Part shown: piece after piece, positions 43,290 to 64,000 of the stretch | Layout: every line of letters begins with the position of its first letter | How positions within the stretch are numbered: the stretch's first letter is position 1 | Assembly (NCBI GenBank): GCA_964187785.1 | Contig: OZ076415.1 | Coordinates: forward strand, 47,988,001-48,052,000 | Direction: 5' to 3' | From: Amphiscolops sp. MND2022 | Taxonomy: Eukaryota | DNA length: 64,000 bases | Translations under genes and position numbers: made by a program | The notes under the pieces: generated by a model | Databases searched by the model: none | Told to the model about the DNA's origin: nothing | What the model saw: only the letters and a program-made list of their open reading frames with translations

Positions 43290-44713
43290 TGAGACTGTCT
43301 GAGAAGCGGGAAATGGTGGGTTGGAGTCTCCACTATGCCGAAATTTTTTTTCATGGTTGCAAAAATAGGAAGGAGACCAAAAGATTTTGAACCTTTTTAA
43401 ACCGAAACACCATCCCTCAACTTTTAGCAGAAACGAAGGGCTTTTTTTTGGGTACTATATAAATTCCAAAGTAACCTCATTTTTTGTTTTTTTTTCAAAG
43501 CTTTCTGTAAAGGAAAACTTTTTTCCAGGTCTCAAGGGTGACCGCATTGATTATTTCTTGATCCTGTGGAGGGATGAATTTTTTTCAATGATTTTGAAAA
43601 TGACATACGGCTTTTTTGGCCACTGCAACTTTTATTCGATAAAATTTTCAATTGATCAAGATGTACAACTTCACTTTGATAATCGTTTCCGGCCAGCGAA
43701 AAACGGCTCCTTGTTCGGCACTATGAGACTTTTTCAAAGAGGAAAGTTTTTGGGGAAAAAATGTTTTTCTTTTCAAAAATTCAGATGTTTGATGTTCCCA
43801 GTTTGGGAAAAAAGCCGTTTTCCATCTTACACCATTGCTTTTTTTAAGCTTGAGGGGGCGCCGACTTGGGCCGTTCCTGGTTTTTTGATTTTTACCATAG
43901 AAGAAACAGCAGGGTCGAATTATGTAGAATCAAAAATTGAGCAAAAGTTTCCAGAATCGAATTGTGACATGGTTTCATCTGGGATCGAACGATGTAAAAA
44001 CTTCATTAATATGCTGGGGGAAGAGAAATGGAGTCATACAACCATCTTTGATTTTTAGTCGGCGCTTCATGAAGTGAAACGCGACTATTATAGTGGCTTT
44101 TCTTTTTTTTTTCAATCCACACGAACTGACCAAAATAGTTCTACAAAAGTTCTACAAAATATTATTGCACCAAATTACACTATTTGGTCTAGCGAACTGA
44201 ACCAGAAAGATTTTTCCTGTTTTCCCGCGTAAAATACCATACCCGGCGAGACCAAAGGGTCCCCCCTTCCAATTTTTTTCGGCACTGCGAGACTTTTTTT
44301 CCGGAAAATATTTTTTCCTCAAAGGGTCCCCTTCAATTTTTTGCTGTTTTGCGACAGAATGGATGTTGGAAAATCCCAAAGGGTCCCCCTCTGTTTTTTT
44401 CGGCACTGTGAGATTTTTTTCCGAAAATAAAAATTTCCCCCCTTCAATTTTTTGATGTATTGCGACAAAACCCCCTCAACTGCGACAAAAATGTTCAATT
44501 TCGGAAGTGTCCCCCTTTCAGCGCACCAGGGGCTAGCGGGCCCCGGCGCGCCACTCTGTTCATTTTTTTGAGTGAGTAATCTTTTCGAAAAATTTTTTTC
44601 CGTATAATTTTCGATTTTCGAGTACTGTAAAAGAGAATACTTGACACTTGGAAGTCTTTTTGCTATTTTTGAGCCTTGGATATGGCGCCGACTTGGGCCG
44701 GTCCCGGCTTGTT
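43290..44713 (-). repeat. Inverted copies of the GGGGACCC-rich family
   Basis: Reverse complement of AACAAGCCGGGACCGGCCCAAGTCGGCGCCATATCCAAGGCTCAAAAATAGC ends at 44713; a second similar end lies near 43886. GGGTCCCC sub-repeats. Confidence 0.7.
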
Positions 44714-46348
44714 AAATTTATCTTGAAATTACCATTTTCCATCCTGTATAATCAATCCTAAGTAGTTTGACTCAGGAGAGGCAACTGCCTCAGCCAATTG
44801 AATATCACTGAAAGCATTCAATTCTTGAACAAAAAACTTTATTACTGGAAGGATAGGGAACACTGAACAGTGGCCTTTCCGACTGAATGGTTTTTATCAA
44901 GCCAGCGAGAAAGCAGTGGCTGAAAAACCACTAAGTAGAAATTGATAATCACCCATTTTCGGTCACTAAAATATAACTACTAACCAGGGCAATACAACTA
45001 CTATGTACTAACCAGGGCAGAGTCTGACAAATTTCGTGACGAATTTCAAGATTACTCGAACTAAACGGCACCAAGTTCCTACTACTGCACATTACAGAAA
45101 GGAAGTGCATTCAAAACAGATTCCTTGAAGTTCAAGCTGTGAGCGCTTTCTCTTCCTTTCAGATCACTTGACCAACGAAAAGCACAAATTGACAACATGG
45201 GAACCAACAAGAAAACAGCCACGACGGGACTCGAACCCAAACCCTTCTACATAGGAGACAGACACCTTATCCATTATGCCACGGAGCTGCGAGCATAAAA
45301 ACATTCAGCTAAAAGTGATCATTACCTGAAACGCAACGTCATCCATTCATCGTTCCAGCGCAGACCAACGAAAAGCACAGTGACAACATGAGAACCGTTA
45401 CGAAAACAGCCACGACGGCACTCGAACCCGCAATCTTCTACTTAGGAGGCAGACACCTTATCCATTAGGCCACGCGGCTGTGAGCATCCAAACATGAAGC
45501 TGAAGATGAAAGCTAACTGAAAAAGGGCGGAGTATTCTCTCGTGTAATATCGGAACTCAGCATCTGAGATAGAATCCAGGTCGAACTCGCGATGAAATCT
45601 AGCACAACGTCCGGGAGGTTAGGAAACGAAATCTACCACATTGAAAGCACAAAAACGCAACAATGAGAACAGACAAAAAAGCCGCGACGGGACTCGAACC
45701 CTCAATCTTCTACTTAGGAGGCAGACACCTTATCCATTAGGCCAAGCGACTGTGAGCATCCAAACATGAAGCTGAAGATGAAAGCTAACTGAAAAGGGAG
45801 GAGCATTTTCTCGTGTATTATCGGAACTCAGCATCTGACATAGAATCCAGGTCGAACCGCGATGAAATCTAGCACGACGTTCGGGAGGTTAGGAAACGAA
45901 GTCTACCACATTGAAAGCAACTGATAGCACAAACACGCAACAAAGAGAACAGACAAAAAAGGCGCGACGAGTGAGTCGAACCTAAAACCTTCTACATAGG
46001 AGATAGACACCTTATCTAATTTGCCACGCAGCAGCGAGCATCAAAACATTCACCTAAAAGTGGTCATTACCTGAAAACGCAACGTCATCTATTCATCGCT
46101 CCAGCGCAGGCGTACGAAAAGCACAAATTGACAACATGGGAACGAACACGAAAACAGCCAGGACGGGACTCGAACCCGCAATCTTCTACTCAGGAGGCAG
46201 ACGCTTCATCTATTAGGCCACGCGGCTGTGAGCATCAAAACAAGAAGCTGAAGGTTGTCATTACCAGAAAACGCAACGTCATCTAATCATTGTTCCAGCG
46301 CAGGCCAACAAAAAGCACAAATTAACAACATGGGAAGCAACAAGAAAA

Positions 46349-46421
46349 CAGCCACGACGGGACTCGAACCCGCAATCTTCTACTTAGGAGGCAGACGCCT
46401 TATCCATTAGGCCACGCGGCT
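46349..46421 (-). tRNA. tRNA-Arg: tRNA-Arg(CCT), representative intact copy of the array
   Basis: AGCCGCG TG GCCT AATGGATA AGGC G TCTGC CTCCTAA GTAGA AGATT GCGGG TTCGAGT CCCGT CGTGGCT G: all four stems pair, CCT anticodon, Arg-type A20 and G73, followed by TTTT. Confidence 0.93.
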
Positions 46422-49400
46422 GTGAGCATCCAAACATGAAGCTGAAGGTGATCATTGCCTGAAAACTCTACTTCATCCATTCATCGTTCCAGCGCAGACC
46501 AACGAAAAGAACAAATCGACAAAATGGGAACCATTACTAAAACAGCCACGACGGGACTCGAACCCGCAATCTTCTACTTAGGAGGCAGACGCCTTATCCA
46601 TTAGGCCACGCGGCTGTGAGCATCCTAACATGAAGATGAAGATGAAAGCTAACTCAAAAAGGCGGAGTATTCTCTCGTGTATTATCGGAACTCAGCGTCT
46701 GACGTAGAATTCAGGTCAAACTCGCGATGAAATCTAGCACAACGTTCGGGAGGTTAGGAAACGAAGTCTACCACGTTGAAAGCAACTGACAGCACAAACA
46801 CGCAACAAAGAGAACAGACAAAAAAGGCGCGACGGGAGTCGAACCTAAAACCTTCTACATAGGAGACAGACACCTTATCTGATATGCCACGCAGCTGCGA
46901 GCAGCAAATAATGCACCTAAAAGTGGTCATTACCTGAAAACGCAACGTCATCTATTCATTGTTCCAGCGCAGGCCAACAAAAAGCACAAATTGACAACAT
47001 GGGAACCAACAAGAAAACAGCCACGACGGGACTCGAACCCGCATTCTTCTACTTAGGAGGCAGACGCCTTATCCATTAGGCCACGCGGCTGTGAGCATCC
47101 AAACATGAAGCTGAAGATGAAAGCTAACTGAAAAAGGCTGTGTATTCTCTCGTGTATTATCGGAACTCAGCATCTGACATAGTATCCGGGTCGAACCGCG
47201 ATGAAATCTAGCACAACGTTCGGGAGGTTAGGAAACGATATCTACCATAATGAAAGCAACTGAAAGCACAAAAACGCAACAATGAGAACAGACAGAAAAA
47301 GGCGCGACGGGAGTCGAACCCAAAACCTTTTACATAGGAGACAGACACCTTATCCATTATACCACGCAGCTGCGAGCATCAAAACATGCACCTAAAATTG
47401 GTCATTACCTGAAAACGCAACGTCATCTATTCATTGTTCCAGCGCAGGCCAACAAAAAGCACAAATTGACAACATGGGAACCAACAAGAAAACAGCCACG
47501 ACGGGACTCGAACCCGCAATCTTCTACTTAGGACGCAGACGCCTTATCCATTAGGACACGCAGCTGTGAGCATCCAAACATGAAGCTGAAGATGAAAGCT
47601 AACTGAAAAAGGCGGTGTATTCTCTCGTGTATTATCGGAACTCAGCATCTGACATAGTATCCGGGTCGAACCGCGATGAAATCTAGCACAACGTTCGGGA
47701 GGTTAGGAAACGAAATCTACCACCATAATGAAAGCAACTGAAAGCACAAAAACGCAACAATGAGAACAGACAGAAAAAGGCGCGACGGGAGTCGAACCCA
47801 AAACCTTTTACATAGGAGACAGACACCTTATCCATTATGCCACGCAGCTGCGAGCATCAAAACATGCACCCGAAAGTTGTCATTACCTGAAAACGCAACG
47901 TCATCTATTCATTGTTCCAGCGCAGGCCAACAAAAAGCACAAATTGACAACATGGGAACCAACAAGAAAACAGCCACAAAGGGACTCGAACCCGCAATCT
48001 TCTCCTTAGGAGGCAGACGCCTTATCCATTAGGCCACGCTGCTGTGAGCATGCAAACATGAAGCTGAAGATGAAAGCTAACTGAAAAAGGCGGTGTATTC
48101 TCTCGTGTATTATCGGAACTCAGCATCTGACATAGTATCCGGGTCGAACCGCAATGAAATCTAGCACAACGTTCGGGAGGTTAGGAAACGAAATCTGCCA
48201 TAATGAAAGCAACTGAAAGCACAAGAACGCAACAATGAGAACAGACAGAAAAAGGCGCGACGGGAGTCGAACCCAAAACCTTTTACATAGGAGACAGACA
48301 CCTTATCCATTATGCCACGCAGCTGCGAGCATCAAAACATGCACCCGAAAGTTGTCATTACCTGAAAACGCAACGTCATCTATTCATTGTTCCAGCGCAG
48401 GCCAACAAAAAGCACAAATTGACAACATGGGAACCAACAAGAAAACAGCCACAAAGGGACTCGAACCCGCAATCTTCTACTTAGGAGGCAGACGCCTTAT
48501 CCATTAGGCCACGCGGCTGTGAGCATGCAAACATGAAGCTGAAGATGAAAGCTAACTGAAAAAGGCGGTGTATTCTCTCGTGTCACACGAGAGAAAACAC
48601 CGCCTTTTTCAATACGGTATTATCGGAACTCAGCATCTGACATAGTATCCGGGTCGAACCGCAATGAAATCTAGCACAACGTTCGGGAGGTTAGGAAACG
48701 AAATCTGCCATAATGAAAGCAACTGAAAGCACAAGAACGCAACAATGAGAACAGACAGAAAAAGGCGCGACGGGAGTCGAACCCAAAACCTTTTACATAG
48801 GAGACAGACACCTTATCCATTATGCCACGCAGCTGCGAGCATCAAAACATTCAGCTAAAAGTGGTCATTACCTGAAAACGCAACGTCATCTATTCATTGT
48901 TCCAGCGCATGCCAACGAAAAGCACAAATTGACAACATGGGAACCAACAAGAAAACAACCACGACGGGACTCGAACCCGCAATCTTCTACTTAGGAGGCA
49001 GACACCTTATCGATTAGGCCACGCAGCTGTGAGCATCCAAACATGAAGCTGAAGGCGATCATTGCCTGAAAAACCATATTCATCCATTCATCGTTCCAGC
49101 GCAGACCAACGAATAGAACAAATTGACAAAATGGGAGCCATTACGAAAACAGCCACTACGGGACTCGAACCCGCAATCTTCTACTTAGGAGGCAGATGCC
49201 TTATCCATTAGGCCACGTGGCTGTGAGCATCCAAACATGAAGCTGAAGATGAAAGCTAACTCAAAAAGGCGGAGTATTCTCTCGTGTATTATCGGAACTC
49301 AGCGTCTGACGTAGAATTCAGGTCGAACTCGCGATGAAATCTAGCACAACGTTCGGGAGGTTAGGAAACGAAGTCTACCACGTTGAAAGCAACTGACAGC

Positions 49401-52212
49401 ACAAACACGCAACAAAGAGAACAGACAAAAAAGGCGCGACGGGAGTCGAACCTAAAACCTTCTACATAGGAGACAGATACCTTATCTGATATGCCACGCA
49501 GCTGCGAGCATCAAAACATGCACCTGAAAGTGGTCATTACCTGAAAACGCAACGTCATCTATTCATTGTTCCGGCGCAGGCCAACAAAAAGCACAAATTG
49601 ACAACATGGGAACCAACAAGAAAACAGCCACGACGTGACTCGAACCCGCAATCTTCTACTTAGGAGGCAGACGCCTTATCCATTAGGCCACGCGGCTGTG
49701 AGCATCCAAACATGAAGCTGAAGATGAAAGCTAACTGAAAAAGGCGGAGTATTCTCTCGTGTATTATCGGAACTCAGCATCTGACATAGTATCCGGGTCG
49801 AACCGCGATGAAATCTAGCACAACGTTCGGGAGGTTAGGAAACGAAATCTACCATAATGAAAGCAACTGAAAGCACAAACACGCAACAAAGAGAACAGAC
49901 AAAAAAAGCGCGACGGGAGTCGAACCCAAAACCTTCTACATAGGAGACAGACACCTTATCCATTATGCCACGCAGCTGCGAGCATCAAAACATTCAGCTA
50001 AAAGTGGTCATTACCTGAAAACGCAACGTCATCTATTCATCGTTGCAGCACAGGCCTACGAAAAGCACAAATTGACAACATGGGAACGAACAAGAAAACA
50101 GCCAGGACGGGACTCGAACCCGCAATCTTCTACTTAGAAGGCACACGCTTCATCTATTAGGCCACGCGGCTGTGAGCATCAAAACAAGAAGCTGAAGGTT
50201 GTCATTACCCGAAAACGCAACGTCATCTATTCATTGTTCCAGCGAAGGCCAACAAAAAGCACAAATTGACAACATGGGAACCAACAAGAAAACAGCCACG
50301 ACGGGACTCGAACCCGCAATCTTCTACGTAGGAGGCAGACGCCTTATTCATTAGGCCACGCGACTGTGAGGATCCAAACATGAAGCTGAAGGTGATCATT
50401 GCCTGAAAACTCTACTTCATCCATTCATCGTTCCAGCGCAGACCAACGAAAAGAACAAATTGACAAAATGGGAGCCATTACGAAAACAGCCACTACGGGA
50501 CTCGAACCCGCAATCTTCTACTTAGGAGGCAGACGCCTTATCCATTAGGCCACGCGGCTGTGAGCATCCAAACATGAAGCTGAAGATGAAAGCTAACTCA
50601 AAAAGGCGGAGTATTCTCTCGTGTATTATCGGAACTCAGCGTCTGACGTAGAATTCAGGTCGAACTCGCGATGAAATTTAGCACAACGTTCGGGAGGTTA
50701 GGAAACGAAGTCTACCACGTTGAAAGCAACTGACAGCACAAACACGCAACAAAGAGAACAGACAAAAAAGGCGCGACGGGAGTCGAACCCAAAACCTTCT
50801 ACATAGGAGACAGACACCTTAACCATTATGCCACGCAGCTGCGAGCATCAAAACATTCAGCTAAAAGTGGTCATTACCTGAAAACGCAACGTCATCTATT
50901 CATCGTTGCAGCACAGGCCTACGAAAAGCACAAATTGACAACATGGGAACGAACAAGAAAACAGCTAGGACGGGACTCGAACCCGCAATCTTCTACTTAG
51001 AAGGCACACGCTTCATCTATTAGGCCACGCGGCTGTGAGCATCAAAACAAGAAGCTGAAGGTTGTCATTACCCGAAAACGCAACGTCATCTATTCATTGT
51101 TCCAGCGAAGGCCAACAAAAAGCACAAATTGACAACATGGGAACCAACAAGAAAACAGCCACGACGGGACTCGAACCCGCAATCTTCTACGTAGGAGGCA
51201 GACGCCTTATTCATTAGGCCACGCGACTGTGAGGATCCAAACATGAAGCTGAAGGTGATCATTGCCTGAAAACTCTACTTCATCCATTCATCGTTCCAGC
51301 GCAGACCAACGAAAAGAACAAATTGACAAAATGGGAACCATCACGAAAACAGCCACGACGGGACTCGAACCCGCAATCTTCTACTTAGGAGGCAGACGCC
51401 TTATCCATTAGGCCACGCGGCTGTGAGCATCCAAACATGAAGCTGAAGATGAAAGCTAACTGAAAAAGGCGGAGTATTCTCTCGTGTATTATCGGAACTC
51501 AGCATCTGACATAGAATCCAGGTCGAACCGCGATGAAATCTAGCACAACGTTCGGGAGGTTAGGAAACGAAATCTACCACACTGAAAGCAACTGAAAGCA
51601 CAAAAACGCAACAATGAGAAAAGACAGAAAAAGGCGCGACGGGAGTCGAACCCAAAACCTTCTACATAGGAGACAGGCACCTAATCCATTATGCCACGCA
51701 GCTGCGAGCATCAAAACATTCAGCTAAAGGTGGTCATTACCTGAAAACGCAACGTCATCTATTCATCGTTGCAGCGCAGGCCTACGAAAAGCACAATCTG
51801 ACAACATGGGAACCAACAAGAAAACAGCCAGGACGGGACTCGAACCCGCAATCTTCTACTTAGGAGGCACACGCTTCATCTATTAGGCCACGCGGCTGTG
51901 AGCATCAAAACAAGAAGCTGAAGGTTGTCATTACCTGAAAACGCAACGTCATCTATTCATTGTTCCAGCGAAGGCCAACAAAAAGCACAAATTGACAACA
52001 TGGGAACAAACAAGAAAACAGCCACGACGGGACTCGAACCCGCAAACTTCTACTTAGGAGGCAGACGCCTTATCCATTAGGCCACGCGACTGTGAGGATC
52101 CAAACATGAAGCTGAAGGTGATCATTGCCTGAAAACTCTACTTCATCCATTCATCGTTCCAGCGCAGACCAACGAAAAGAACAAATTGACAAAAGAGGAA
52201 CCATTACGAAAA

Positions 52213-52285
52213 CAGCCACGACGGGACTCGAACCCGCAATCTTCTTCTTATGAGGCAGACGCCTTATCCATTAGGCCACGCGGCT
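52213..52285 (-). pseudogene. tRNA-Arg-body copy with anticodon mutated to CAT
   Basis: Loop CTCATAA; the anticodon stem carries a G-A mismatch. Confidence 0.7.
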
Positions 52286-55200
52286 GTGAGCATCCAAACA
52301 TGAAGCTGAAGATGAAAGCTAACTGAAAAAGGCGGAGTATGCTCTCGTGTATTATCGGAACTCAGCATCTGACATAGAATCCAGGTCGAACCGCGATGAA
52401 ATCTAGCACAACGTTCGGGAGGTTAGGAAACGAAATCTACCACATTGAAAGCAACTGAAAGCACAAAAACGCAACAATGAGAAAAGACAGAAAAAGGCGC
52501 GACGGGAGTCGAACCCAAAACCTTCTACATAGGAGACAGGCACCTTATCCATTATGCCACGCAGCTGCGAGCATCAAAACATTCAGCTAAAAGTGGTCAT
52601 TACCTGAAAACGCAACGTCATCTATTCATCGTTGCAGCGCAGGCCTACGAAAAGCACAAATTGACAACATGGGAACGAACAAGAAAACAGCCAGGACGGG
52701 ACTCGAACCCGCAATCTTCTACTTAGGAGGCACACGCTTCATCTATTAGGCCACGCGGCTGTGAGCATCAAAACAAGAAGCTGAAGGTTGTCATTACCTG
52801 AAAACGCAACGTCATCTATTCATTGTTCTAGCGAAGGCCAACAAAAAGCACAAATTGACAACATGGGAACAAACAAGAAAACAGCCACGACGGGACTCGA
52901 ACCCGCAAACTTCTACTTAGGAGGCAGACGCCTTATCCATTAGGCCACGCGACTGTGAGGATCCAAACATGAAGCTGAAGGTGATCATTGCCTGAAAACT
53001 CTACTTCATCCATTCATCGTTCCAGCGCAGACCAACGAAAAGAACAAATTGACAAAAGGGGAACCATTACGAAAACAGCCACGACGCGACTCGAGCCCGC
53101 AATCTTCTTCTTAGGAGGCAGACGCCTTATCCATTAGGCCACGCGGCTGTGAGCATCCAAACATGAAGCTGAAGATGAAAGCTAACTGAAAAAGGCGGAG
53201 TATGCTCTCGTGTATTATCGGAACTCAGCATCTGACATAGAATCCAGGTCGAACCGCGATGGAATCTAGTACAACGTTCGGGAGGTTAGGAAACGAAATC
53301 TACCACATTGAAAGCAACTGAAAGCACAAAAACGCAACAATGAGAACAGATAGAAAAAGGCGCGACGGGAGTCGAACCCAAAACCTACATAGGAGGCAGA
53401 CAACTTATCCAACGCAGCTGCGAGCATCAAAACATTAACATAAATATGGTCATTACCTGAAAAGGCAACGTCATCTATTCATCGTTGCAGCGCAGGCCTA
53501 CGAAAAGCACAAATTGACAACATGGGAACCAACAAGAAAACAGCCAGGACGGGACTCGAACCCGCAATCTTCTACTTAGGAGACACACGCTTCATCTATT
53601 AGGCCACGCGGCTGTGAGCATCAAAACAAGAAGCTGGAGGTTGTCATTACCTGAAAACGCAACGTCATCTATTCATTGTTCCAGCGAAGGCCAACAAAAA
53701 GCACAAATTGACAACATGGGAACCAACAAGAAAACAGCCACGACGGGACTCGAACCCGCAATCTTCTACTTAGGAGGCAGACGCCTTATCCATTAGGCCA
53801 CGCGGCTGTGAGCATCCAGACATGAAGCTGAAGGTGATCATTGCCTGAAAACTCTACTTCATCCATTCATCGTTCCAGCGCAGACCAACGAAAAAAACAA
53901 ATTGACAAAACGGGAACAATTACGAAAACAGCCACGACGGGACTCGAACCCGCTATCTTCTACTTAGGAGGCAGACGCCTTATCCATTAGGCCACGCGGC
54001 TGTGAGCATCCAAACATGAAGCTGAAGATGAAAGCTAACTGAAAAAGGCGGGGTATTCTCTCGTGTATTATCGGAACTCAGCATCTGACATAGAATCCAG
54101 GTCGAACCGCGATGAAATCTAGCACAACTTTCAGGAGGTTAGGAAACGAAATCTACCATAATGAAAGCAACTGAAAGCACAAAAACGCAACAATGAGAAC
54201 AGACAGAAAAAGGCGCGACGAGAGTCGAACCTAAAACCTTCTACATAGGAGACAGACACCTTTTCCAATATGCCACGCAGCTGCGAGCATCGAAACATTC
54301 ACCTAAAAGTGGTCATTACCTGAAAACGCAACGTCATCTATTCATTGTTCCAGCGAAGGCGAACAAAAAGCACAAATTGACAACATGGGAACAAACAAGA
54401 AAACAGCCACGACGGGACTCGAACCCGCAATCTTCTACTTAGGAGGCAGACGCCTTATCCATTAGGCCACGCGACTGTGAGGATCCAAACATGAAGCTGG
54501 AGGTGATCATTGCCTGAAAACTCTACTTCATCCATTCATCGTTCCAGCGCAGACCAATGAAAAGAACAAATTGACAAAAGGGGAACCATTACGAAAACAG
54601 CCACGACGGGACTCGAACCCGCAATCTTCTTCTTAGGAGGCAGACGCCTTATCCATTAGGCCACGCGGCTGTGAGCATCAAAACATGAAGCTGAAGATGA
54701 AAGCTAACTGAAAAAGGAGGAGTATGCTCTCGTGTATTATCGGAACTCAGCAGCATCTGACATAGAATCCAGGTCGAACCGCGATGAAATCTAGTACAAC
54801 GTTTGGGAGGTTAGGAAACGGAATCTACCACATTGAAAGCAACTGAAAGCACAAAAACGCAACAATGAGAACAGACAGAAAAAGGCGCGACGGGAGTCGA
54901 ACCTAAAACCTACATAGGAGGCAGACAACTTATCCAACGCAGCTGCGAGCATCAAAACATTCCTATAAAAGTGGTCATTACCTGAAAACGCAACGTCATC
55001 TATTCATTGTTCCAGCGAAGGCCAACAAAAAGCACAAATTGACAACATGGGAACCAACAAGAAAACAGCCACGACATGACTCGAACCGGCAATCTTCTAC
55101 TTCGGAGGCAGACGCCTTATCCATTAGAATCCAGGTCGAACCGCGATGAAATCTAGCACAACGTTCGGGAGGTTAGGAAACGAAATCTACCACATTGAAA

Positions 55201-58200
55201 GCAACTGAAAGCACAAAAACGCAACAATGAGAAAAGACAGAAAAAGGCGCGACGCGAGTCGAACCCAAAACCTTCTACATAGGAGACAGACACCTTATTC
55301 ATTATGCCACGCAGCTGCGAGCATCAAAACATTCAGCTAAAAGTGGTCATTACCTGAAAACGCAACGTCATCTATTCATTGTTGCAGCGCAGGCCTACGA
55401 AAAGCACAAATTGACAACATCGGAACGAACAACAAAACAGCCAGGACGTGACTCGAACCCGCAATCTTCTACTTAGGAGGCACACGCTTCATCTATTAGG
55501 CCAAGCGGCTGTGAGCATCAAAACAAGAAGCTGAAGGTTGTCATTACCTGAAAACGCAACGTCATCCATTCATCGTTCCAGCGCAGACCAACGAAAAGAA
55601 CAAATTGACAAAAGGGGAACCATTACGAAAACAGCCACGACGGGACTCGAACCCGCAATCTTCTTCTTAGGAGGCAGACGCCTTATCCATTAGGCCACGC
55701 GGCAGTGAGCATCCAAACATGAAGCTGAAGATGAAAGCTAACTGAAAAAGGCGGAGTATGCTCTCGTGTATTATCGGAACTCAGCATCTGATATAGAATC
55801 CAGGTCGAACCGCGATGAAATCTAGTACAACGTTCGGGAGGTTAGGAAACGAAATCTACCACATTGAAAGCAACTGAAAGCACAAAAACGCAACAATGAG
55901 AACAGATAGAAAAAGGCGCGACGGGAGTCGAACCTAAAACCTTCTACATAGGAGGCAGACAACTTATCCAACGCAGCTGCGAGCATCAAAACATTCACAT
56001 AAAAGTGGTCATTACCTGAAAAGGCAACGTCATCTATTCATCATTGCAGCGCAGGCCTACGAAAAGCACAAATTGACAACATGGGAACGAACAAGAAAAC
56101 AGCCAGGACGGGACTCGAACCCGCAATCTTCTACTTAGGAGACACACGCTTCATCTACTAGGCCACGCGGCTGTGAGCATCAAAACAAGAAGCTGGAGGT
56201 TGTCATTACCTGAAAGCGCAACGTCATCTATTCATTGTTCCAGCGAAGGCCAACGAAAAGCACAAATTTACAACATGGGAACCAACAAGAAAACAGCCAC
56301 GACGGGACTCGAGCCCGCAATCTTCTACTTAGGAGGCAGACGCCTTATCCATTAGGCCACGCGGCTGTGAGCATCCAAACATGAAGCTGAAGGTGATCAT
56401 TGCCTGAAAACTCTACTTCATCCATTCATCGTTCCAGCGCAGACCAACGAATAGAACAAATTGACAAAATGAGAGCCATTACAAAAACAGCCACTACGGG
56501 ACTCGAACCCGCAATCTTTTACTTAGGAGGCTGACGCCTTATTCATTAGGCCACGCGGCTTGGAGCATCCAAACATGAAGCTGAAGATGAAAGCTAACTG
56601 AGAAAAGGGAAGTATTCTCGTGTATCATCGGAACTCAGCATCTGACATAGAATCCAGGTCGAATCGCGATGAAATCTAGCACAACGTTCGGGAGGTTAGG
56701 AAACGAAATCTACCACATTGAAAGCAACTGAAAGCACAAAAACCCAACAATGAGAAAAGACAGAAAAAGGCGCGACGCGAGTCGAACCCAAAACCTTCTA
56801 CATAGGAGACAGACACCTTATTCATTATGCCACGCAGCTGCGAGCATCAAAACATTCAGCTAAAAGTGGTCATTACCTGAAAACGCAACGTCATCTATTC
56901 ATTGTTGCAGCGCAGGCCTACGAAAAGCACAAATTGACAACATCGGAACGAACAACAAAACAGCCAGGACGTGACTCGAACCCGCAATCTTCTACTTAGG
57001 AGGCACACGCTTCATCTATTAGGCCAAGCGGCTGTGAGCATCAAAACAAGAAGCTGAAGGTTGTCATTACCTGAAAACGCAACGTCATCCATTCATCGTT
57101 CCAGCGCAGACCAACGAAAAGAACAAATTGACAAAAGGGGAACCATTACGAAAACAGCCACGACGGGACTCGAACCCGCAATCTTCTTCTTAGGAGGCAG
57201 ACGCCTTATCCATTAGGCCACGCGGCAGTGAGCATCCAAACATGAAGCTGAAGATGAAAGCTAACTGAAAAAGGCGGAGTATGCTCTCGTGTATTATCGG
57301 AACTCAGCATCTGATATAGAATCCAGGTCGAACCGCGATGAAATCTAGTACAACGTTCGGGAGGTTAGGAAACGAAATCTACCACATTGAAAGCAACTGA
57401 AAGCACAAAAACGCAACAATGAGAACAGATAGAAAAAGGCGCGACGGGAGTCGAACCTAAAACCTTCTACATAGGAGGCAGACAACTTATCCAACGCAGC
57501 TGCGAGCATCAAAACATTCACATAAAAGTGGTCATTACCTGAAAAGGCAACGTCATCTATTCATCATTGCAGCGCAGGCCTACGAAAAGCACAAATTGAC
57601 AACATGGGAACGAACAAGAAAACAGCCAGGACGGGACTCGAACCCGCAATCTTCTACTTAGGAGACACACGCTTCATCTACTAGGCCACGCGGCTGTGAG
57701 CATCAAAACAAGAAGCTGGAGGTTGTCATTACCTGAAAGCGCAACGTCATCTATTCATTGTTCCAGCGAAGGCCAACGAAAAGCACAAATTTACAACATG
57801 GGAACCAACAAGAAAACAGCCACGACGGGACTCGAGCCCGCAATCTTCTACTTAGGAGGCAGACGCCTTATCCATTAGGCCACGCGGCTGTGAGCATCCA
57901 AACATGAAGCTGAAGGTGATCATTGCCTGAAAACTCTACTTCATCCATTCATCGTTCCAGCGCAGACCAACGAATAGAACAAATTGACAAAATGAGAGCC
58001 ATTACAAAAACAGCCACTACGGGACTCGAACCCGCAATCTTTTACTTAGGAGGCTGACGCCTTATTCATTAGGCCACGCGGCTTGGAGCATCCAAACATG
58101 AAGCTGAAGATGAAAGCTAACTGAGAAAAGGGAAGTATTCTCGTGTATCATCGGAACTCAGCATCTGACATAGAATCCAGGTCGAATCGCGATGAAATCT

Positions 58201-61200
58201 AGCACAACGTTCGGGAGGTTAGGAAACGAAATCTACCACATTGAAAGCAACTGAAAGCACAAAAACGCAACAATGAGAACAGACAGAAAAAGGCGCGACG
58301 GGAGTCGAACCTAAAACCTTCTACATAGGAGGCAGACAACTTATCCAACGCAGCAGCGAGCATCAAAACATTCACATAAAAGTGGTCATTACCTGAAAAG
58401 GCAACGTCATCTATTCATCATTGCAGCGCAGGCCTACGAAAAGCACAAATTGACAACATAGGAACGAACAAGAAAACAGCCAGGACGGGACTCGAACCCG
58501 CAATCTTCTACTTAGGAGACACACGCTTCATCTATTAGGCCACGCGGCTGTGAGCATCAAAACAAGAAGCTGGAGGTTGTCATTACCTGAAAGCGCAACG
58601 TCATCTATTCATTGTTCCAGCGAAGGCCAACAAAAAGCACAAATTGACAACATGGGAACCAACAAGAAAACAGCCACGACGGGACTCGAGCCCGCAATCT
58701 TCTACTTAGGAGGCAGACGCCTTATCCATTAGGCCACGCGGCTGTGAGCATCCAAACATGAAGCTGAAGGTGATCATTGCCTGGAAACTCTACTTCATCC
58801 ATTCATCGTTCCAGTGCAGACCAACAAAAAGAATAATTTGACAAAATGGGAACCATTACGAAAACAGCCACGACGGGACTCGAACCCACAATCTTCTACT
58901 TAGGAGGCAGACGCCTTATCCATTAGGCCACGCAGATGTGAGCATCCAAACATGAAGCTGAAGATGAAAGCTAACTGAAAAAGCCGGAGTATTCTCACGT
59001 GTATTATCGGAATCTGACATAGAATCCAGGTCGAACCGCGATGAAATCTAGCACAACTTTCAGGAGGTTAAGGAAACGAAATCTACCACGTTGAAAGCAA
59101 CTGAAAGCACAAAAACGCAACAATGAGAACAGACAGAAAAAGGCGCGACGAGAGTCGAACCTAAAACCTTCTACATAGGAGACAGACAACTTATCCAAAG
59201 CAGCTGCGAGCATCAAAACATTCACATAAAAGTTGTCATTACCTGAAAACGCAACGTCATCTATTCATCGTTGCAGCGCAGACCTACGAAAAGCACAAAT
59301 TGACAACATGGGAACGAACAAGAAAACAGCCAGGGCGGGACTCGAAGCCGCAATCTTCTACTTAGGAGGCACACGCTTCATCTATAAGGCCACGCGGCTG
59401 TGAGCATCAAAACAAGAAGCTGAAGGTTGTCATTACCTGAAAACGCAACGTCATCTATTCATTGTTCCAGCGAAGGCCAACAAAAAGCACAATTTGACAA
59501 CATGGGAACCAACAAGAAAACAGCCACGACGGGACTCGAACCCGCAATCTTCTACTTAGGAGGCAGACGCCTTATCCATTAGGCCACGCGGCTGTGAGCA
59601 TCCAAACATGAAGCTGAAGGTGATCATTGCATGAAAGCTCTACTTCATCCATTCATCGTTCCAGTGCAGACCAACAAAAACAATAATTTGACAAAATGGG
59701 AACCATTAGGAAAACAGCCACGACGGGACTCGAACCCACAATCTTCTACTTAGGAGGCAGACGCCTTATTCATTAGGCCACGCAGATGTGAGCATCCAAA
59801 CATGAAGCTGAAGATGAAAGCCAACTGAAAAAGCCGGAGTATTCTCTCGTGTATTATCGGAATCTGACATAGAATCCAGGTCGAACCGCGATGAAATCTA
59901 GCACAACTTTCAGGAGGTCAGGAAACGAAATCTACCACGTTGAAAGCAACTGAAAGCACAAAAACCCAACAATGAGGACAGACAAAGGCGCGATGAAAGT
60001 CGAACCTAAAACCTTCTACATAGGAGACAGACACCTTATCCAATATGCCACGCAGCTGCGAGCATCAAAACATTCACCTAAAAGTGGTCATTACCTGAAA
60101 ACGCAACGTCATCTATTCATTGTTCCAGCGAAGGCCAACAAAAAGCACAAATTGACAACATGAGAACAAACAAGAAAACAGCCACGACGGGACTCGAACC
60201 CGCAATCTTCTACTTAGGAGGCAGACGCCTTATCCATTAGGCCACGCGGCTGTGAGCATCCAAACATGAAGCTGAAGGTGATCAATGCCTGAAAACTCTA
60301 CTTCATCCATTCATCGTTCCAGCGCAGACCAACGAAAAGAACAAATTGACAAAATGGGAACCATTACGAAAACAGCCACGACGGACTCGAACCCACAATC
60401 TTCTACTTAGGAGGCAGACGCCTTATCCATTAGGCCACGCGGCTGTGAGCATCCAAACATGAAGCTGAAGATGAAAGCTAACTGAAAAATCGGAGTATTC
60501 TCTCGTGTATTATCGGAACTCAGCATCTGACATAGAATCCAGGTCGAACCGCGATGAAATCTAGCACAACGTTCAGGAGGTTAGGAAACGAAATCTACCA
60601 CATTGAAAGCACAAAAACACAAGAATGAGAACAGACAGAAAAAAGCGCGACGAGAGTCGAACCTAAAACCTTCTACATAGGAGACAGACACCTTATCCAA
60701 TATGCCACGCAGCTGCGAGCATCAAAACATTCACCTAAAAGTGGTCATTACCTGAAAACGCAACGTCATCTATTCATTGTTCCAGCGAAGGCCAACAAAA
60801 AGCACAATTTGACAACATGGGAACCAACAAGAAAACAGCCACGACGGGACTCGAACCCGCAATCTTCTACTTAGGAGGCAGACGCCTTATCCATTAGGCC
60901 ACGCGGCTGTGAGCATCCAAACATGAAGCTGAAGGTGATCATTGCCTGAAAACTCTACTTCATCCATTCATCGTTCCAGTGCAGACCAACAAAAAGAATA
61001 ATTTGACAAAATGGGAACCATTACGAAAACAGCCACGACGGGACTCGAACCCACAATCTTCTACTTAGGAGGCAGACGCCTTATCCATTAGGCCACGCAG
61101 ATGTGAGCATCCAAACATGAAGCTGAAGATGAAAGCTAACTGAAAAAGCCGGAGTATTCTCTCGTGTATTATCGGAATCTGACATAGAATCCAGGTCGAA

Positions 61201-64000
61201 CCGCGATGAAATCTAGCACAACTTTCAGGAGGTTAGGAAACGAAATCTACCACGTTGAAAGCAACTGAAAGCACAAAAACCCAACAATGAGAACAGACAG
61301 AAAAAGGCGCGACGAGAGTCGAACCTAAAACCTTCTACATAGGAGACAGACACCTTATCCAATATGCCACGCAGCTGCAAGCATCAAAACATTCACCTAA
61401 AAGTGGTCATTACCTGAAAACGCAACGTCATCTATTCATCGTTGCAGCGCAGGCCTACGAAAAGCACAAATTGACAACATGGGAACGAACAAGAAAACAG
61501 CCAGGGCGGGACTCGAAGCCGCAATCTTCTACTTAGGAGGCACACGCTTCATCTATAAGGCCACGCGGCTGTGAGCATCAAAACAAGAAGCTGAAGGTTG
61601 TCATTACCTGAAAACGCAACGTCATCTATTCATTGTTCCAGCGAAGGCCAACAAAAAGCACAATTTGACAACATGGGAACCAACAAGAAAACAGCCACGA
61701 CGGGACTCGAACCCGCAATCTTCTACTTAGGAGGCAGACGCCTTATCCATTAGGCCACGCGTCTGTGAGCATCCAAACATGAAGCTGAAGGTGATCATTG
61801 CCTGAAAACTCTACTTCATCCATTCATCGTTCCAGTGCAGACCAACAAAAAGAATAATTTGACAAAATGGGAACCTTTAGGAAAACAACCACGACGGGAC
61901 TCGAACCCACAATCTTCTACTTAGGAGGCAGACGCCTTATCCATTAGGCCACGCAGATGTGAGCATCCGAACATGAAGCTGAAGATGAAAGCTAACTGAA
62001 AAAGCCGGAGTATTCTCTCGTGTATTATCGGAATCTGACATAGAATCCAGGTCGAACCGCGATGAAATCTAGCACAACTTTCAGGTTAGGAAACGAAATC
62101 TACCACGTTGAAAGCAACTGAAAGCACAAAAACCCAACAATGAGAACAGACAGAAAAAGGCGCGACGAGAGTCGAACCTAAAACCTTCTACATAGGAGAC
62201 AGACACCTTATCCAATATGCCACGCAGCTGCGAGCATCAAAACATTCACCTAAAAGTGGTCATTACCTGAAAACGCAACGTCATCTATTCATCATTGCAG
62301 CGCAGGCCTACGAAAAGCACAAATTGACAACATAGGAACGAACAAGAAAACAGCCAGGACGGGACTCGAACCCGCAATCTTCTACTTAGGAGACACACGC
62401 TTCATCTATAAGGCCACGCGGCTGTGAGCATCAAAACAAGAAGCTGGAGGTTGTCATTACCTGAAAGCGCAACGTCATCTATTCATTGTTCCAGCGAAGG
62501 CCAACAAAAAGCACAAATTGACAACATGGGAACCAACAAGAAAACAGCCACGACGGGACTCGAGCCCGCAATCTTCTACTTAGGAGGCAGACGCCTTATC
62601 CATTAGGCCACGCGGCTGTGAGCATCCAAACATGAAGCTGAAGGTGATCATTGCCTGGAAACTCTACTTCATCCATTCATCGTTCCAGTGCAGACCAACA
62701 AAAAGAATAATTTGACAAAATGGGAACCATTACGAAAACAGCCACGACGGGACTCGAACCCACAATCTTCTACTTAGGAGGCAGACGCCTTATCCATTAG
62801 GCCACGCAGATGTGAGCATCCAAACATGAAGCTGAAGATGAAAGCTAACTGAAAAAGCCGGAGTATTCTCACGTGTATTATCGGAATCTGACATAGAATC
62901 CAGGTCGAACCGCGATGAAATCTAGCACAACTTTCAGGAGGTTAAGGAAACGAAATCTACCACGTTGAAAGCAACTGAAAGCACAAAAACGCAACAATGA
63001 GAACAGACAGAAAAAGGCGCGACGAGAGTCGAACCTAAAACCTTCTACATAGGAGACAGACAACTTATCCAAAGCAGCTGCGAGCATCAAAACATTCACA
63101 TAAAAGTTGTCATTACCTGAAAACGCAACGTCATCTATTCATCGTTGCAGCGCAGACCTACGAAAAGCACAAATTGACAACATGGGAACGAACAAGAAAA
63201 CAGCCAGGGCGGGACTCGAAGCCGCAATCTTCTACTTAGGAGGCACACGCTTCATCTATAAGGCCACGCGGCTGTGAGCATCAAAACAAGAAGCTGAAGG
63301 TTGTCATTACCTGAAAACGCAACGTCATCTATTCATTGTTCCAGCGAAGGCCAACAAAAAGCACAATTTGACAACATGGGAACCAACAAGAAAACAGCCA
63401 CGACGGGACTCGAACCCGCAATCTTCTACTTAGGAGGCAGACGCCTTATCCATTAGGCCACGCGGCTGTGAGCATCCAAACATGAAGCTGAAGGTGATCA
63501 TTGCATGAAAGCTCTACTTCATCCATTCATCGTTCCAGTGCAGACCAACAAAAACAATAATTTGACAAAATGGGAACCATTAGGAAAACAGCCACGACGG
63601 GACTCGAACCCACAATCTTCTACTTAGGAGGCAGACGCCTTATTCATTAGGCCACGCAGATGTGAGCATCCAAACATGAAGCTGAAGATGAAAGCCAACT
63701 GAAAAAGCCGGAGTATTCTCTCGTGTATTATCGGAATCTGACATAGAATCCAGGTCGAACCGCGATGAAATCTAGCACAACTTTCAGGAGGTCAGGAAAC
63801 GAAATCTACCACGTTGAAAGCAACTGAAAGCACAAAAACCCAACAATGAGGACAGACAAAGGCGCGATGAAAGTCGAACCTAAAACCTTCTACATAGGAG
63901 ACAGACACCTTATCCAATATGCCACGCAGCTGCGAGCATCAAAACATTCACCTAAAAGTGGTCATTACCTGAAAACGCAACGTCATCTATTCATTGTTCC

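What the first reader, a model, noticed from the sequence alone, without database searches (positions are those of the whole stretch)
45216..64000. At least 19 kb of single-isoacceptor tRNA-Arg(CCT) satellite
Seen: about 86 head-to-tail copies, all on the minus strand, each followed by a T4-T5 run, continuing past the window. Established: tRNA arrays are known in Entamoeba and some animals, and tRNA genes can act as chromatin barriers and TFIIIC/condensin sites. Inference: dosage of an AGG decoder is unlikely to need this copy number when about half the copies are defective. The array may have a structural role (centromeric, boundary, Pol III hub) or be a tRNA-fragment source.
Basis: partly seen in the sequence, partly recalled or inferred. 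Interest (0 to 1): 0.7.

Follow-up and report, generated by a model that had tools for sequence, protein, structure and literature searches.

The report
Tandem array of arginine tRNA genes
This animal chromosome carries a real 48-kb run of 214 head-to-tail copies of one arginine tRNA gene, mostly broken; it is one of many such tRNA arrays in the genome, a layout already reported in a few animals, so it is not a special structural element.

Summary
The window holds exactly 86 tRNA-Arg(CCT)-like units, all on the minus strand, each followed by a T4-T7 run. The array runs 29 kb past the window: 214 units over 48,055 bp on a 74.7-Mb chromosome-scale contig.

It is built like a higher-order-repeat satellite. 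Monomers are 194 bp and about 281 bp. Blocks of 475, 863, 1,523 and 3,874 bp repeat, and some copies are identical.

Only 33 units (20 in the window) keep a fully paired cloverleaf with anticodon CCT, and 18 are identical to each other. The distal 12 kb holds only dead copies yet is still amplifying.

Read k-mer depth matches the assembly's k-mer multiplicity, so this is not an assembly expansion.

The array is not unique. The same genome has single-isoacceptor arrays for Lys-TTT, Lys-CTT, Arg-TCT, Arg-TCG, Gly-GCC and Glu-CTC, sometimes two per chromosome. That argues against a centromere role. Hydractinia, Nematostella and zebrafish show the same layout.

Two intact solo Arg-CCT genes of slightly different sequence lie elsewhere.

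Best reading: a tRNA gene array that evolves by unequal crossing-over, with defective copies carried along. Whether it is transcribed is untested, because no RNA data were available. Other first-stage readers of this scan had already noted the array's continuation.

The parts
45216..64000 (-). The window's share of the array: 86 head-to-tail tRNA-Arg(CCT)-derived units. The whole array runs to 29,270 bases beyond the window's end (214 units, 48,055 bp).
46349..46421 (-). Canonical tRNA-Arg(CCT) gene. It scores 64.9 bits against Rfam tRNA and its lowest-energy fold is a cloverleaf. It carries the A box TGGCCTAATGG and the B box GGTTCGAGTCC. Eighteen identical copies occur in the array.
46345..46348 (-). 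TTTT run directly after the 3' end of the canonical gene, the Pol III terminator type. 211 of the 214 units have T4 or longer here.
46228..46348 (-). The 121-bp short spacer (T run included) of a 194-bp unit. This sequence is found nowhere else in the genome.
47091..47371 (-). A 281-bp long unit (type E). It holds a defective tRNA-like body at 47299-47371 that does not fold as a cloverleaf, plus a 208-bp long spacer. The long spacer is also specific to the array and matches no Rfam family.
46343..49054 (-). Block of 475-bp dimers, each one long defective unit plus one 194-bp unit. TRF reports 5.6 copies with 90% matches.
49698..54282 (-). Block of about five 863-bp tetramers (types E/L-C-A-B). 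Types A and B are intact or nearly so; types C and E are defective.
55222..58266 (-). Two copies of a 1,523-bp higher-order unit, identical over 1,522 bp.
58537..64000 (-). Two copies of a 3,874-bp higher-order unit; the second runs on to 1,537 bases beyond the window's end. They differ at 1 position in 3,127 bp.
45216..45288 (-). End unit of the array (36.9 bits, 10 differences from the canonical copy). Unique flank begins at 45215.
50099..50171 (-). Unit with the anticodon changed to TCT. A second such unit lies at 50962-51034, and a unit with CAT lies at 52213-52285.

Best explanation
What it is (shown): a correctly assembled 48-kb tandem array of tRNA-Arg(CCT) gene units. Each unit is a 73-nt tRNA body with internal A and B boxes, a T4-T7 terminator and a spacer private to the array. 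Units are 194 bp or about 281 bp long.

How it evolves (shown): like a satellite, by unequal crossing-over and duplication of multi-unit blocks of 475, 863, 1,523 and 3,874 bp.

Why so many copies are dead (inferred): selection on any single copy is weak. Mutations pile up, and dead units are copied along with intact neighbours inside the same block. This explains why about 85% of units are defective and why a wholly dead distal domain still grows.

Context (shown): it is one member of a genome-wide organisation in which many isoacceptor families each have their own array.

Function (inferred): the 33 intact units, all of types A and B, are ordinary Pol III genes able to supply tRNA-Arg(CCT). 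By analogy with zebrafish, the array may be the high-output, possibly oocyte-loaded source. The two solo genes, which differ from the array copy at three positions each, may be the constitutive ones.
For: Copy number and structure.

Higher-order repeats and identical blocks.

Intact copies occur only in unit types A (22) and B (11), spread through the proximal 36 kb, with none in the distal 12 kb.

The distal 473-bp dimer of two dead units is 97% alike over 6.1 copies, while its monomers are only about 76% alike.

A dispersed 535-bp element was inserted once in the distal domain and then duplicated with its block (97% identity).

Read support: array unitigs have k-mer depth 16.8, 15.8, 17.2 and 10.9 times the single-copy flank. 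The matching 31-mer multiplicities in the assembly are 13.8, 19.7, 19.7 and 10.4.

Both spacer types occur only at this locus; the solo genes share only the tRNA body.

Other single-isoacceptor arrays in the same genome.

Precedents: Hydractinia has tandem arrays of tRNAs for all 20 amino acids, and Nematostella also has tRNA arrays (PMC11067881). tRNA clusters are widespread and variable in animals (PMC2888827). [quoted passage not shown]
Against: No expression data exist. All four runs that hold this DNA come from one sample and none is on record as RNA.

By counts of distinct variants there is no consistent sign of purifying selection on the tRNA bodies. Type A has 0.44 variant states per site in the body against 0.31 in the spacer. 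Type B has 0.23 against 0.43. Singletons in A plus B are 0.40 against 0.26 per site.

Two intact solo genes with their own T runs might be enough for AGG decoding.

In Arabidopsis, clustered tRNA genes are silent (PMC7544208).

The read runs may come from the same individual as the assembly, and the tool warns that contig depth is not a copy number.
Confidence: 0.6

Rival explanations
1. Silent satellite. The array is transcriptionally repressed repeat DNA derived from a tRNA gene. It grows and shrinks neutrally, and the two solo genes supply all tRNA-Arg(CCT), as with the clustered tRNA genes of Arabidopsis.
For: 85% of units are defective. A wholly dead domain is still amplifying. Variants are not depleted in the tRNA bodies. 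There are two intact solo genes with terminators. Mobile elements inserted in the array are tolerated. Arabidopsis offers a precedent (PMC7544208).
Against: Eighteen identical and 33 intact copies persist, with complete A and B boxes and terminators. CpG observed/expected is about 1.0 in the array against 0.86-0.91 in the flanks, so there is no sign of long-term germline methylation decay. In zebrafish, repetitive tRNA regions are expressed maternally (PMC11417395).
Confidence: 0.27
2. Structural element. The array acts through bound TFIIIC, condensin or Pol III as a chromatin boundary, a clustering hub or a centromere, independently of tRNA output.
For: About 49% of units keep a B box of the form GGTTCGANTCC (105 of 214), and 211 of 214 keep a terminator. 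The B-box CpG is kept in 178 of 190 in-frame units, the best kept of the seven CpGs. A human tRNA tandem repeat has been proposed as a boundary (PMC4041453).
Against: In defective units the A and B boxes are barely better kept than the whole body: 0.88-0.91 against 0.87. The array's sequence occurs at a single locus. Unrelated tRNA arrays occur twice on each of C7 and C8, which does not fit one centromere per chromosome. A DENN-domain gene lies about 24 kb away. The human case rests on a CTCF site in a 7.3-kb unit, which is a different architecture.
Confidence: 0.08
3. Assembly artefact. The assembler over-expanded a short repeat.
For: Blocks of 1.5 kb and 3.1 kb are identical or nearly so, which assemblers can produce in error.
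Against: Array unitigs have k-mer depth 11-17 times the single-copy flank, which matches the assembly's 31-mer multiplicity of 10-20. Summed depth over the first 3 kb of the array is 18-24 times the flank, against 5-22 times expected from the assembly depending on how contigs are laid.
Confidence: 0.03
4. A tRNA-derived SINE or other mobile element that landed repeatedly or was amplified by a transposon.
For: The genome is rich in tRNA-related mobile elements according to other notes of this scan.
Against: The arrangement is strictly head-to-tail on one strand with fixed spacing. The spacers are found nowhere else. The units have no A-rich tails. The two solo copies share only the 73-nt tRNA body.
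Confidence: 0.02

Closest known systems
tRNA tandem arrays of Hydractinia (and Nematostella), Schnitzler et al. 2024, PMC11067881
   Same: Evenly spaced head-to-tail arrays of tens to hundreds of similar copies of one tRNA with similar spacers. They are present for many amino acids in one animal genome, and their significance is unknown.
   Different: [quoted passage not shown] This array has a clear higher-order-repeat structure and a large majority of decayed copies. The host is an unidentified animal with a 1.07-Gb genome, so it is not either Hydractinia species.
Zebrafish repetitive tRNA gene regions (chromosome 4), PMC2888827 and PMC11417395
   Same: Most tRNA genes lie in repetitive clusters alongside a few isolated copies. 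Cluster and isolated copies differ as isodecoders, as the array and solo copies do here.
   Different: Zebrafish clusters are mostly heterogeneous, mixing isoacceptors, whereas this array is a single isoacceptor. Maternal expression is shown in zebrafish and untested here.
Clustered tRNA genes of Arabidopsis (Tyr/Ser and Pro clusters), PMC7544208 and PMC2886086
   Same: Extra tRNA gene copies in tandem arrays with intact Pol III elements. They evolve by unequal crossing-over.
   Different: The Arabidopsis clusters are shown to be methylated and silent. Here CpG is not depleted and the expression state is unknown. The Arabidopsis units hold three genes.
Entamoeba tRNA arrays, PMC2652664
   Same: Nearly all tRNA genes lie in tandem arrays.
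   Different: Entamoeba units carry up to five different tRNAs with microsatellite-like spacers. Here there is one tRNA per unit and no short tandem repeats in the spacer.
Human 1q23.3 tRNA variable-number tandem repeat, PMC4041453
   Same: A tandem repeat that contains tRNA genes and varies in copy number, proposed to be a boundary element.
   Different: The human unit is 7.3 kb and GC-rich, with several tRNAs making up under 6% of the unit and a conserved CTCF site. Here the tRNA body is 26-38% of a 194-281-bp unit.
5S rDNA arrays with oocyte and somatic types (Xenopus, zebrafish; PMC5340908)
   Same: A short Pol III gene sits in a long tandem array with pseudogenes, next to a small set of variant copies elsewhere.
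   Different: The RNA class is different, and stage-specific use is not shown here.

Membership tests
Nuclear tRNA-Arg(CCT) gene (Pol III type 2) | Cloverleaf with all stems paired | tested here: met
   The canonical copy folds as a cloverleaf and scores 64.9 bits. Only 33 of 214 units have all 21 stem pairs, so this is met for a minority of units.
Nuclear tRNA-Arg(CCT) gene (Pol III type 2) | Anticodon CCT in a 7-nt loop | tested here: met
   187 of 214 units, and 82 of the 86 in the window.
Nuclear tRNA-Arg(CCT) gene (Pol III type 2) | Internal A and B boxes and a downstream T4+ terminator | tested here: met
   The A box TGGCCTAATGGA occurs in 78 units and the B box GGTTCGAGTCC in 84. A T4+ run follows 211 of 214 units.
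Nuclear tRNA-Arg(CCT) gene (Pol III type 2) | Transcribed, processed and charged with arginine | not testable with these tools
   No RNA run holds the stretch.
Satellite DNA with higher-order repeats | Long head-to-tail array of one monomer family | tested here: met
   214 units on one strand over 48 kb.
Satellite DNA with higher-order repeats | Blocks of several distinct monomers repeat as units and are more alike than the monomers are to one another | tested here: met
   The string of unit types and the 475, 863, 1,523 and 3,874-bp blocks show this. The blocks are 97-100% alike while the monomers are 76-86% alike.
Hydractinia-type tRNA tandem arrays | Tens to hundreds of evenly spaced similar copies of one tRNA with similar spacers | tested here: met
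Hydractinia-type tRNA tandem arrays | Arrays for many amino acids in the same genome | tested here: met
   Arrays were seen for Lys-TTT, Lys-CTT, Arg-TCT, Arg-TCG (with TGG variants), Gly-GCC and Glu-CTC. Not all 20 amino acids were surveyed.
Entamoeba-type tRNA arrays | Units with several different tRNAs and microsatellite-like spacers | tested here: not met
   There is one tRNA per unit, and the spacers hold no short tandem repeats.
Centromeric satellite | The same or a related satellite at one site on each chromosome | tested here: not met
   The unit and both spacers occur only at C7:48.03-48.08 Mb. Unrelated tRNA arrays occur twice on each of C7 and C8.
Centromeric satellite | CENP-A chromatin | not testable with these tools
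   No chromatin data were available.
tRNA-derived SINE | Dispersed copies with a tRNA-unrelated body, a tail and target-site duplications | tested here: not met
   Only two solo copies exist, and they share just the tRNA body.
Human-type tRNA VNTR boundary element | A multi-kb GC-rich unit with a conserved CTCF site | tested here: not met
   The units are 194-281 bp at 45-47% GC. A CTCF motif was not searched for.

The most novel reading that the evidence does not exclude
In this unidentified animal, most or all tRNA isoacceptor families are encoded in their own satellite-like arrays with nucleosome-scale periods of 155-300 bp. The arrays carry an isodecoder distinct from the few solo genes. 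They would form a second, stage-specific (for example oocyte-loaded) tRNA gene system of the zebrafish kind, or a set of Pol III/TFIIIC chromatin hubs. That would extend Hydractinia-type organisation to a new lineage with far more compact units.
Probability: 0.25. Interest if true: 0.6.

Novelty: new member of a known kind. Interest (0 to 1): 0.35.

Why it matters
Tandem tRNA arrays in animals have been reported only in a few genomes, and their purpose is unknown. This locus gives a fully resolved example. It shows which units are intact and how dead units are carried along in higher-order blocks. It has a dead domain that still amplifies. It also has solo genes whose three diagnostic differences each would let tRNA sequencing tell array output from solo output. 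That makes the question 'are arrayed tRNA genes used, and when?' directly testable in this species. As a single locus it is not surprising, because the genome holds many larger arrays of the same kind.

Tried and rejected
1. Arrays only for basic amino acids (Lys, Arg, His), which would hint at demand from Lys/Arg-rich proteins. Rejected: Gly-GCC (586 pattern matches, with a 204-bp-period array on C10) and Glu-CTC (142 matches, with a 190-bp-period array on C5) also have arrays.

2. Methylation-driven decay as a sign of silencing. CpG-to-TpG/CpA changes are 316 of 1,546 differences, but CpG observed/expected is about 1.0 in the array and 0.86-0.91 in the flanks. This is inconclusive.

3. Preferential conservation of the promoter boxes in dead copies. 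The effect is marginal.

4. Purifying selection on tRNA bodies. Pairwise diversity is lower in the bodies of types A and B, but counts of distinct variants and singletons show no consistent depletion. I do not claim selection.

5. A shared origin of the arrays. The spacers of this array match no other array and no other locus.

6. A hidden RNA gene in the long spacer. No credible Rfam match: the best hit scores 12 bits at E 0.76.

7. Relatives in public metagenome contigs. A 31-nt exact pattern from the canonical tRNA found nothing.

8. Naming the organism. Run and organism names are coded. The protein atlas gave no useful taxon for a DENN exon. The species stays unidentified.

9. My first depth comparison used full-length identical sites and suggested a fourfold excess in the reads. 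That was superseded by the 31-mer multiplicity comparison, which agrees within 0.8-1.2 fold.

10. One paper search failed on a term that was too long.
Full report
**Observation**

The window's right end is a dense run of tRNA-like genes.
- ARAGORN finds 61 genes between 45215 and 63662, all on the minus strand: 58 Arg(CCT), 2 Arg(TCT) and 1 with CAT.
- Rfam's tRNA model passes 60 copies at its gathering score, nine of them at 64.9 bits.
- Tandem Repeats Finder reports periods of 194 and 475 bp.
- With the best copy (46349-46421) as a blastn query I count 86 units, all minus strand.
- Each of the 86 is followed by a T run: T4 in 57, T5 in 22, T6 in 6 and T7 in 1.
- GC rises from about 0.38 in the flank to about 0.46 in the array.

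**Extent**

The window is C7:47988001-48052000 of a 1.07-Gb assembly, and contig C7 is 74.67 Mb. I fetched the next 60 kb and joined it to the window as 'extended coordinates'.
- The array ends at 93270 (C7:48081270). It holds 214 units over 48,055 bp with no N.
- The following 30 kb holds no tRNA.
- The upstream edge keeps about 35 nt of the usual leader and then becomes unique sequence.
- The downstream edge at 45215 abuts unique sequence and then a dispersed repeat.

**Is the copy number real?**

Four public runs from one sample hold the stretch, kept as k-mer contigs. On the unique flank these contigs have depth about 70, 13, 40 and 27 in the four runs. The table compares array contigs with the mean 31-mer multiplicity of the matching variants in the assembly.

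| Array contig | Depth relative to flank | 31-mer multiplicity in assembly |
|---|---|---|
| 1 | 16.8 | 13.8 |
| 2 | 15.8 | 19.7 |
| 3 | 17.2 | 19.7 |
| 4 | 10.9 | 10.4 |

- Summed depth over the first 3 kb of the array is 18-24 times the flank. The assembly predicts 5-8 times if each piece is laid once and 15-22 times if it is laid at every fitting place.
- The assembler has therefore not inflated the array.
- Two caveats apply. The sample may be the one that was assembled, and the tool warns that contig depth is not a copy number.

**Anatomy**

- The canonical unit is 194 bp: a 73-nt tRNA, a T run and a spacer.
- The tRNA folds as a cloverleaf. Its D arm and T loop are of the usual animal Arg type (read directly from the sequence). 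Its A box is TGGCCTAATGG and its B box is GGTTCGAGTCC.
- A second unit class is about 281 bp. It has a decayed tRNA-like body that no longer folds as a cloverleaf and a 208-bp spacer.
- The two spacers are alike at both ends and differ in the middle (read).
- Neither spacer occurs anywhere else in the genome. The long one matches no Rfam family.
- Clustering whole units gives a string of types with plain higher-order repeats:
  - long unit plus short unit, 475 bp;
  - a tetramer E-C-A-B, 863 bp;
  - trimers D-A-B;
  - in the distal 12 kb, a dimer F-H of 473 bp.
- Some blocks are almost or fully identical: 1,522 bp at a shift of 1,523 bp, and 3,127 bp with one mismatch at a shift of 3,874 bp.
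- The distal F-H dimers are 97% alike while their monomers are about 76% alike.

**State of the copies**

- Of 214 units, 18 are identical to the canonical tRNA, and 33 have all 21 stem pairs plus CCT. All 33 are of types A and B.
- 141 units reach Rfam's threshold.
- Of the 86 units in the window, 20 are fully intact.
- None of the 51 units in the distal 12 kb is intact.
- Within a tetramer, A and B are good or nearly so, and C and E are dead. The dead copies are carried along when the block is duplicated. This explains the high share of defective copies without invoking any function for them.
- A dispersed 535-bp element (thousands of candidates elsewhere, 94-96% identity) was inserted once in the distal domain. 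It was then duplicated with its block, and the two copies are 97% alike.

**Selection**

- Pairwise diversity is lower in the tRNA body than in the spacer for type A (0.040 against 0.061) and type B (0.039 against 0.076). It is not lower for the dead type C (0.042 against 0.035).
- Counting distinct variant states, which removes the effect of block amplification, gives no consistent depletion. Type A has 0.44 per site in the body against 0.31 in the spacer. Type B has 0.23 against 0.43. Singletons in A plus B are 0.40 against 0.26 per site.
- I therefore do not claim purifying selection on individual copies.
- In defective units the A and B boxes are kept at 0.88-0.91 identity, against 0.87 for the whole body. 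This gives no sign that promoter or TFIIIC sites are maintained for their own sake.
- CpG observed/expected is about 1.0 in the array and 0.86-0.91 in the flanks. This gives no sign of long-term methylation decay.

**Genome context**

- A pattern for the Arg D arm plus the CCT loop matches 62 places: 60 in this array, plus one on C3 and one on C65.
- A looser pattern adds one place on C11, and also a set of CCT-anticodon copies inside another array on C8.
- The C3 and C11 copies are solo genes with unrelated flanks, their own T runs and good cloverleaves. Each differs from the array copy at three positions. The C3 differences include a compensating pair in the T stem.
- A whole-genome scan with the Rfam tRNA model reports on the order of 10^5 first-look candidates (the tool calls this figure rough). 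Its best hits all lie in other arrays.
- ARAGORN on samples of those arrays, plus two further patterns, shows the following.

| tRNA | Period | Location |
|---|---|---|
| Lys(TTT) | 193 bp | C7:5.23-5.34 Mb and unplaced contig C1504 |
| Lys(CTT) | 155 bp | C8:51.32 Mb |
| Arg(TCT) | about 300 bp | C8:47.91 Mb |
| Arg(TCG), with TGG variants | 174 bp | C9:57.55 Mb |
| Gly(GCC) | 204 bp | C10:26.07 Mb (586 pattern matches genome-wide) |
| Glu(CTC) | 190 bp | C5:31.51 Mb (142 pattern matches genome-wide) |

- Arrays are therefore the normal way this genome holds tRNA genes. They are not limited to particular amino acids.
- Their spacers are unrelated to one another, so each array grew locally from its own founder gene.

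**What is known**

- Bermudez-Santana et al. 2010 found tRNA clusters to be widespread and very variable among animals. In Nematostella 89% of tDNAs are clustered, in stickleback 87% and in zebrafish 65% (PMC2888827).
- Schnitzler et al. 2024 describe tandem arrays of tens to hundreds of copies for tRNAs of all 20 amino acids in two Hydractinia genomes, and tRNA arrays in Nematostella. They call this unusual outside Entamoeba and of unclear significance (PMC11067881).
- In Arabidopsis, clustered tRNA genes are methylated and silent (PMC7544208).
- A human tRNA tandem repeat has been proposed as a boundary element on the strength of a CTCF site (PMC4041453).
[quoted passage not shown] Isodecoders expressed only later are present as single or few isolated copies (PMC11417395).

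**Reading**

- Shown: the locus is a real tRNA gene array that behaves as a higher-order-repeat satellite, and it is one of many in the genome.
- Inferred: the intact A and B units are working Pol III genes, and the rest are passengers.
- Whether the array is used, and when, is open. The zebrafish pattern of arrayed maternal isodecoders and solo later-stage isodecoders fits the array/solo sequence split seen here, but that is analogy only.
- The main rival is the Arabidopsis pattern of silent clusters.
The sequence is at one locus, arrays come two to a chromosome, and the promoter boxes are not specially preserved.
- A centromere role is unlikely. A boundary or hub role cannot be excluded with these tools.

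**Limits**

- No RNA data were on offer.
- The survey of other arrays is a sample, not a census.
- Other first-stage readers of this scan had already noted the continuation of this array, its dead distal domain and an inserted mini-element. I checked the first two myself and did not examine the third beyond seeing the gap in unit spacing.

Noticed in passing
L014, L015, L018, L020 (C7:5.26-5.34 Mb and C1504): The Lys(TTT) arrays (193-bp period) hold regularly recurring copies whose anticodon has changed to TTA (stop-reading), ATT, TGT, TTC or a 4-nt TTAA. These changed copies are amplified as part of higher-order blocks. If transcribed and charged, they could misread codons.
   Followed up: no
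L009, L010 (C8:51.322-51.342 Mb): The Lys(CTT) array has a 155-bp period and about 64 genes per 10 kb. Roughly every 2.3 kb one copy carries the anticodon CCT, so a Lys-type body carries the Arg AGG anticodon.
   Followed up: no
L017 (C9:57.55 Mb): The Arg(TCG) array has a 174-bp period. About a third of its units read TGG (the Pro anticodon) at the same length, which points to anticodon-changed copies amplified in blocks.
   Followed up: no
C10:26.07-26.12 Mb and C5:31.51-31.57 Mb (not fetched): Large arrays of Gly(GCC) (204-bp period; 586 pattern matches genome-wide) and Glu(CTC) (190-bp period; 142 matches) were seen only through pattern searches.
   Followed up: partly
window 44050-44720: A dispersed repeat of about 670 bp lies next to the array's end. 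It has more than 5,000 first-look candidates in the genome at 90-93% identity. Its read k-mer depth is about 10,000-22,000 times the single-copy flank.
   Followed up: partly
L005:5660-6195 and C7:48079999-48080723: A dispersed element of about 535 bp (about 2,600 candidates, 94-96% identity) is inserted in the dead distal domain of the array. It is present twice because its 2.3-kb block was duplicated after the insertion.
   Followed up: partly
L003:4855-5356 (4.9-5.4 kb beyond the window's end): One unit spacing is 573 bp instead of about 194-281 bp. Another reader calls the insert a Helentron-like mini-element. I did not examine it.
   Followed up: no
window 19460-19987 (-): This exon encodes a DENN domain (Pfam PF02141, E 6e-27). 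A host gene therefore lies about 24 kb from the array.
   Followed up: partly
window 33076-35088 (-): A 670-aa open reading frame has no Pfam match.
   Followed up: no
L013:2038-2109 (-) (C11:20.886 Mb): The solo Arg(CCT) gene on C11 has a tRNA-Met(CAT) gene about 300 bp away. This is a small mixed cluster of the ordinary dispersed kind.
   Followed up: no
L011:1309-1381 (+) (C65): A tRNA-like sequence has an Arg-type D arm, but ARAGORN reads its anticodon as CTA (amber-reading).
   Followed up: no
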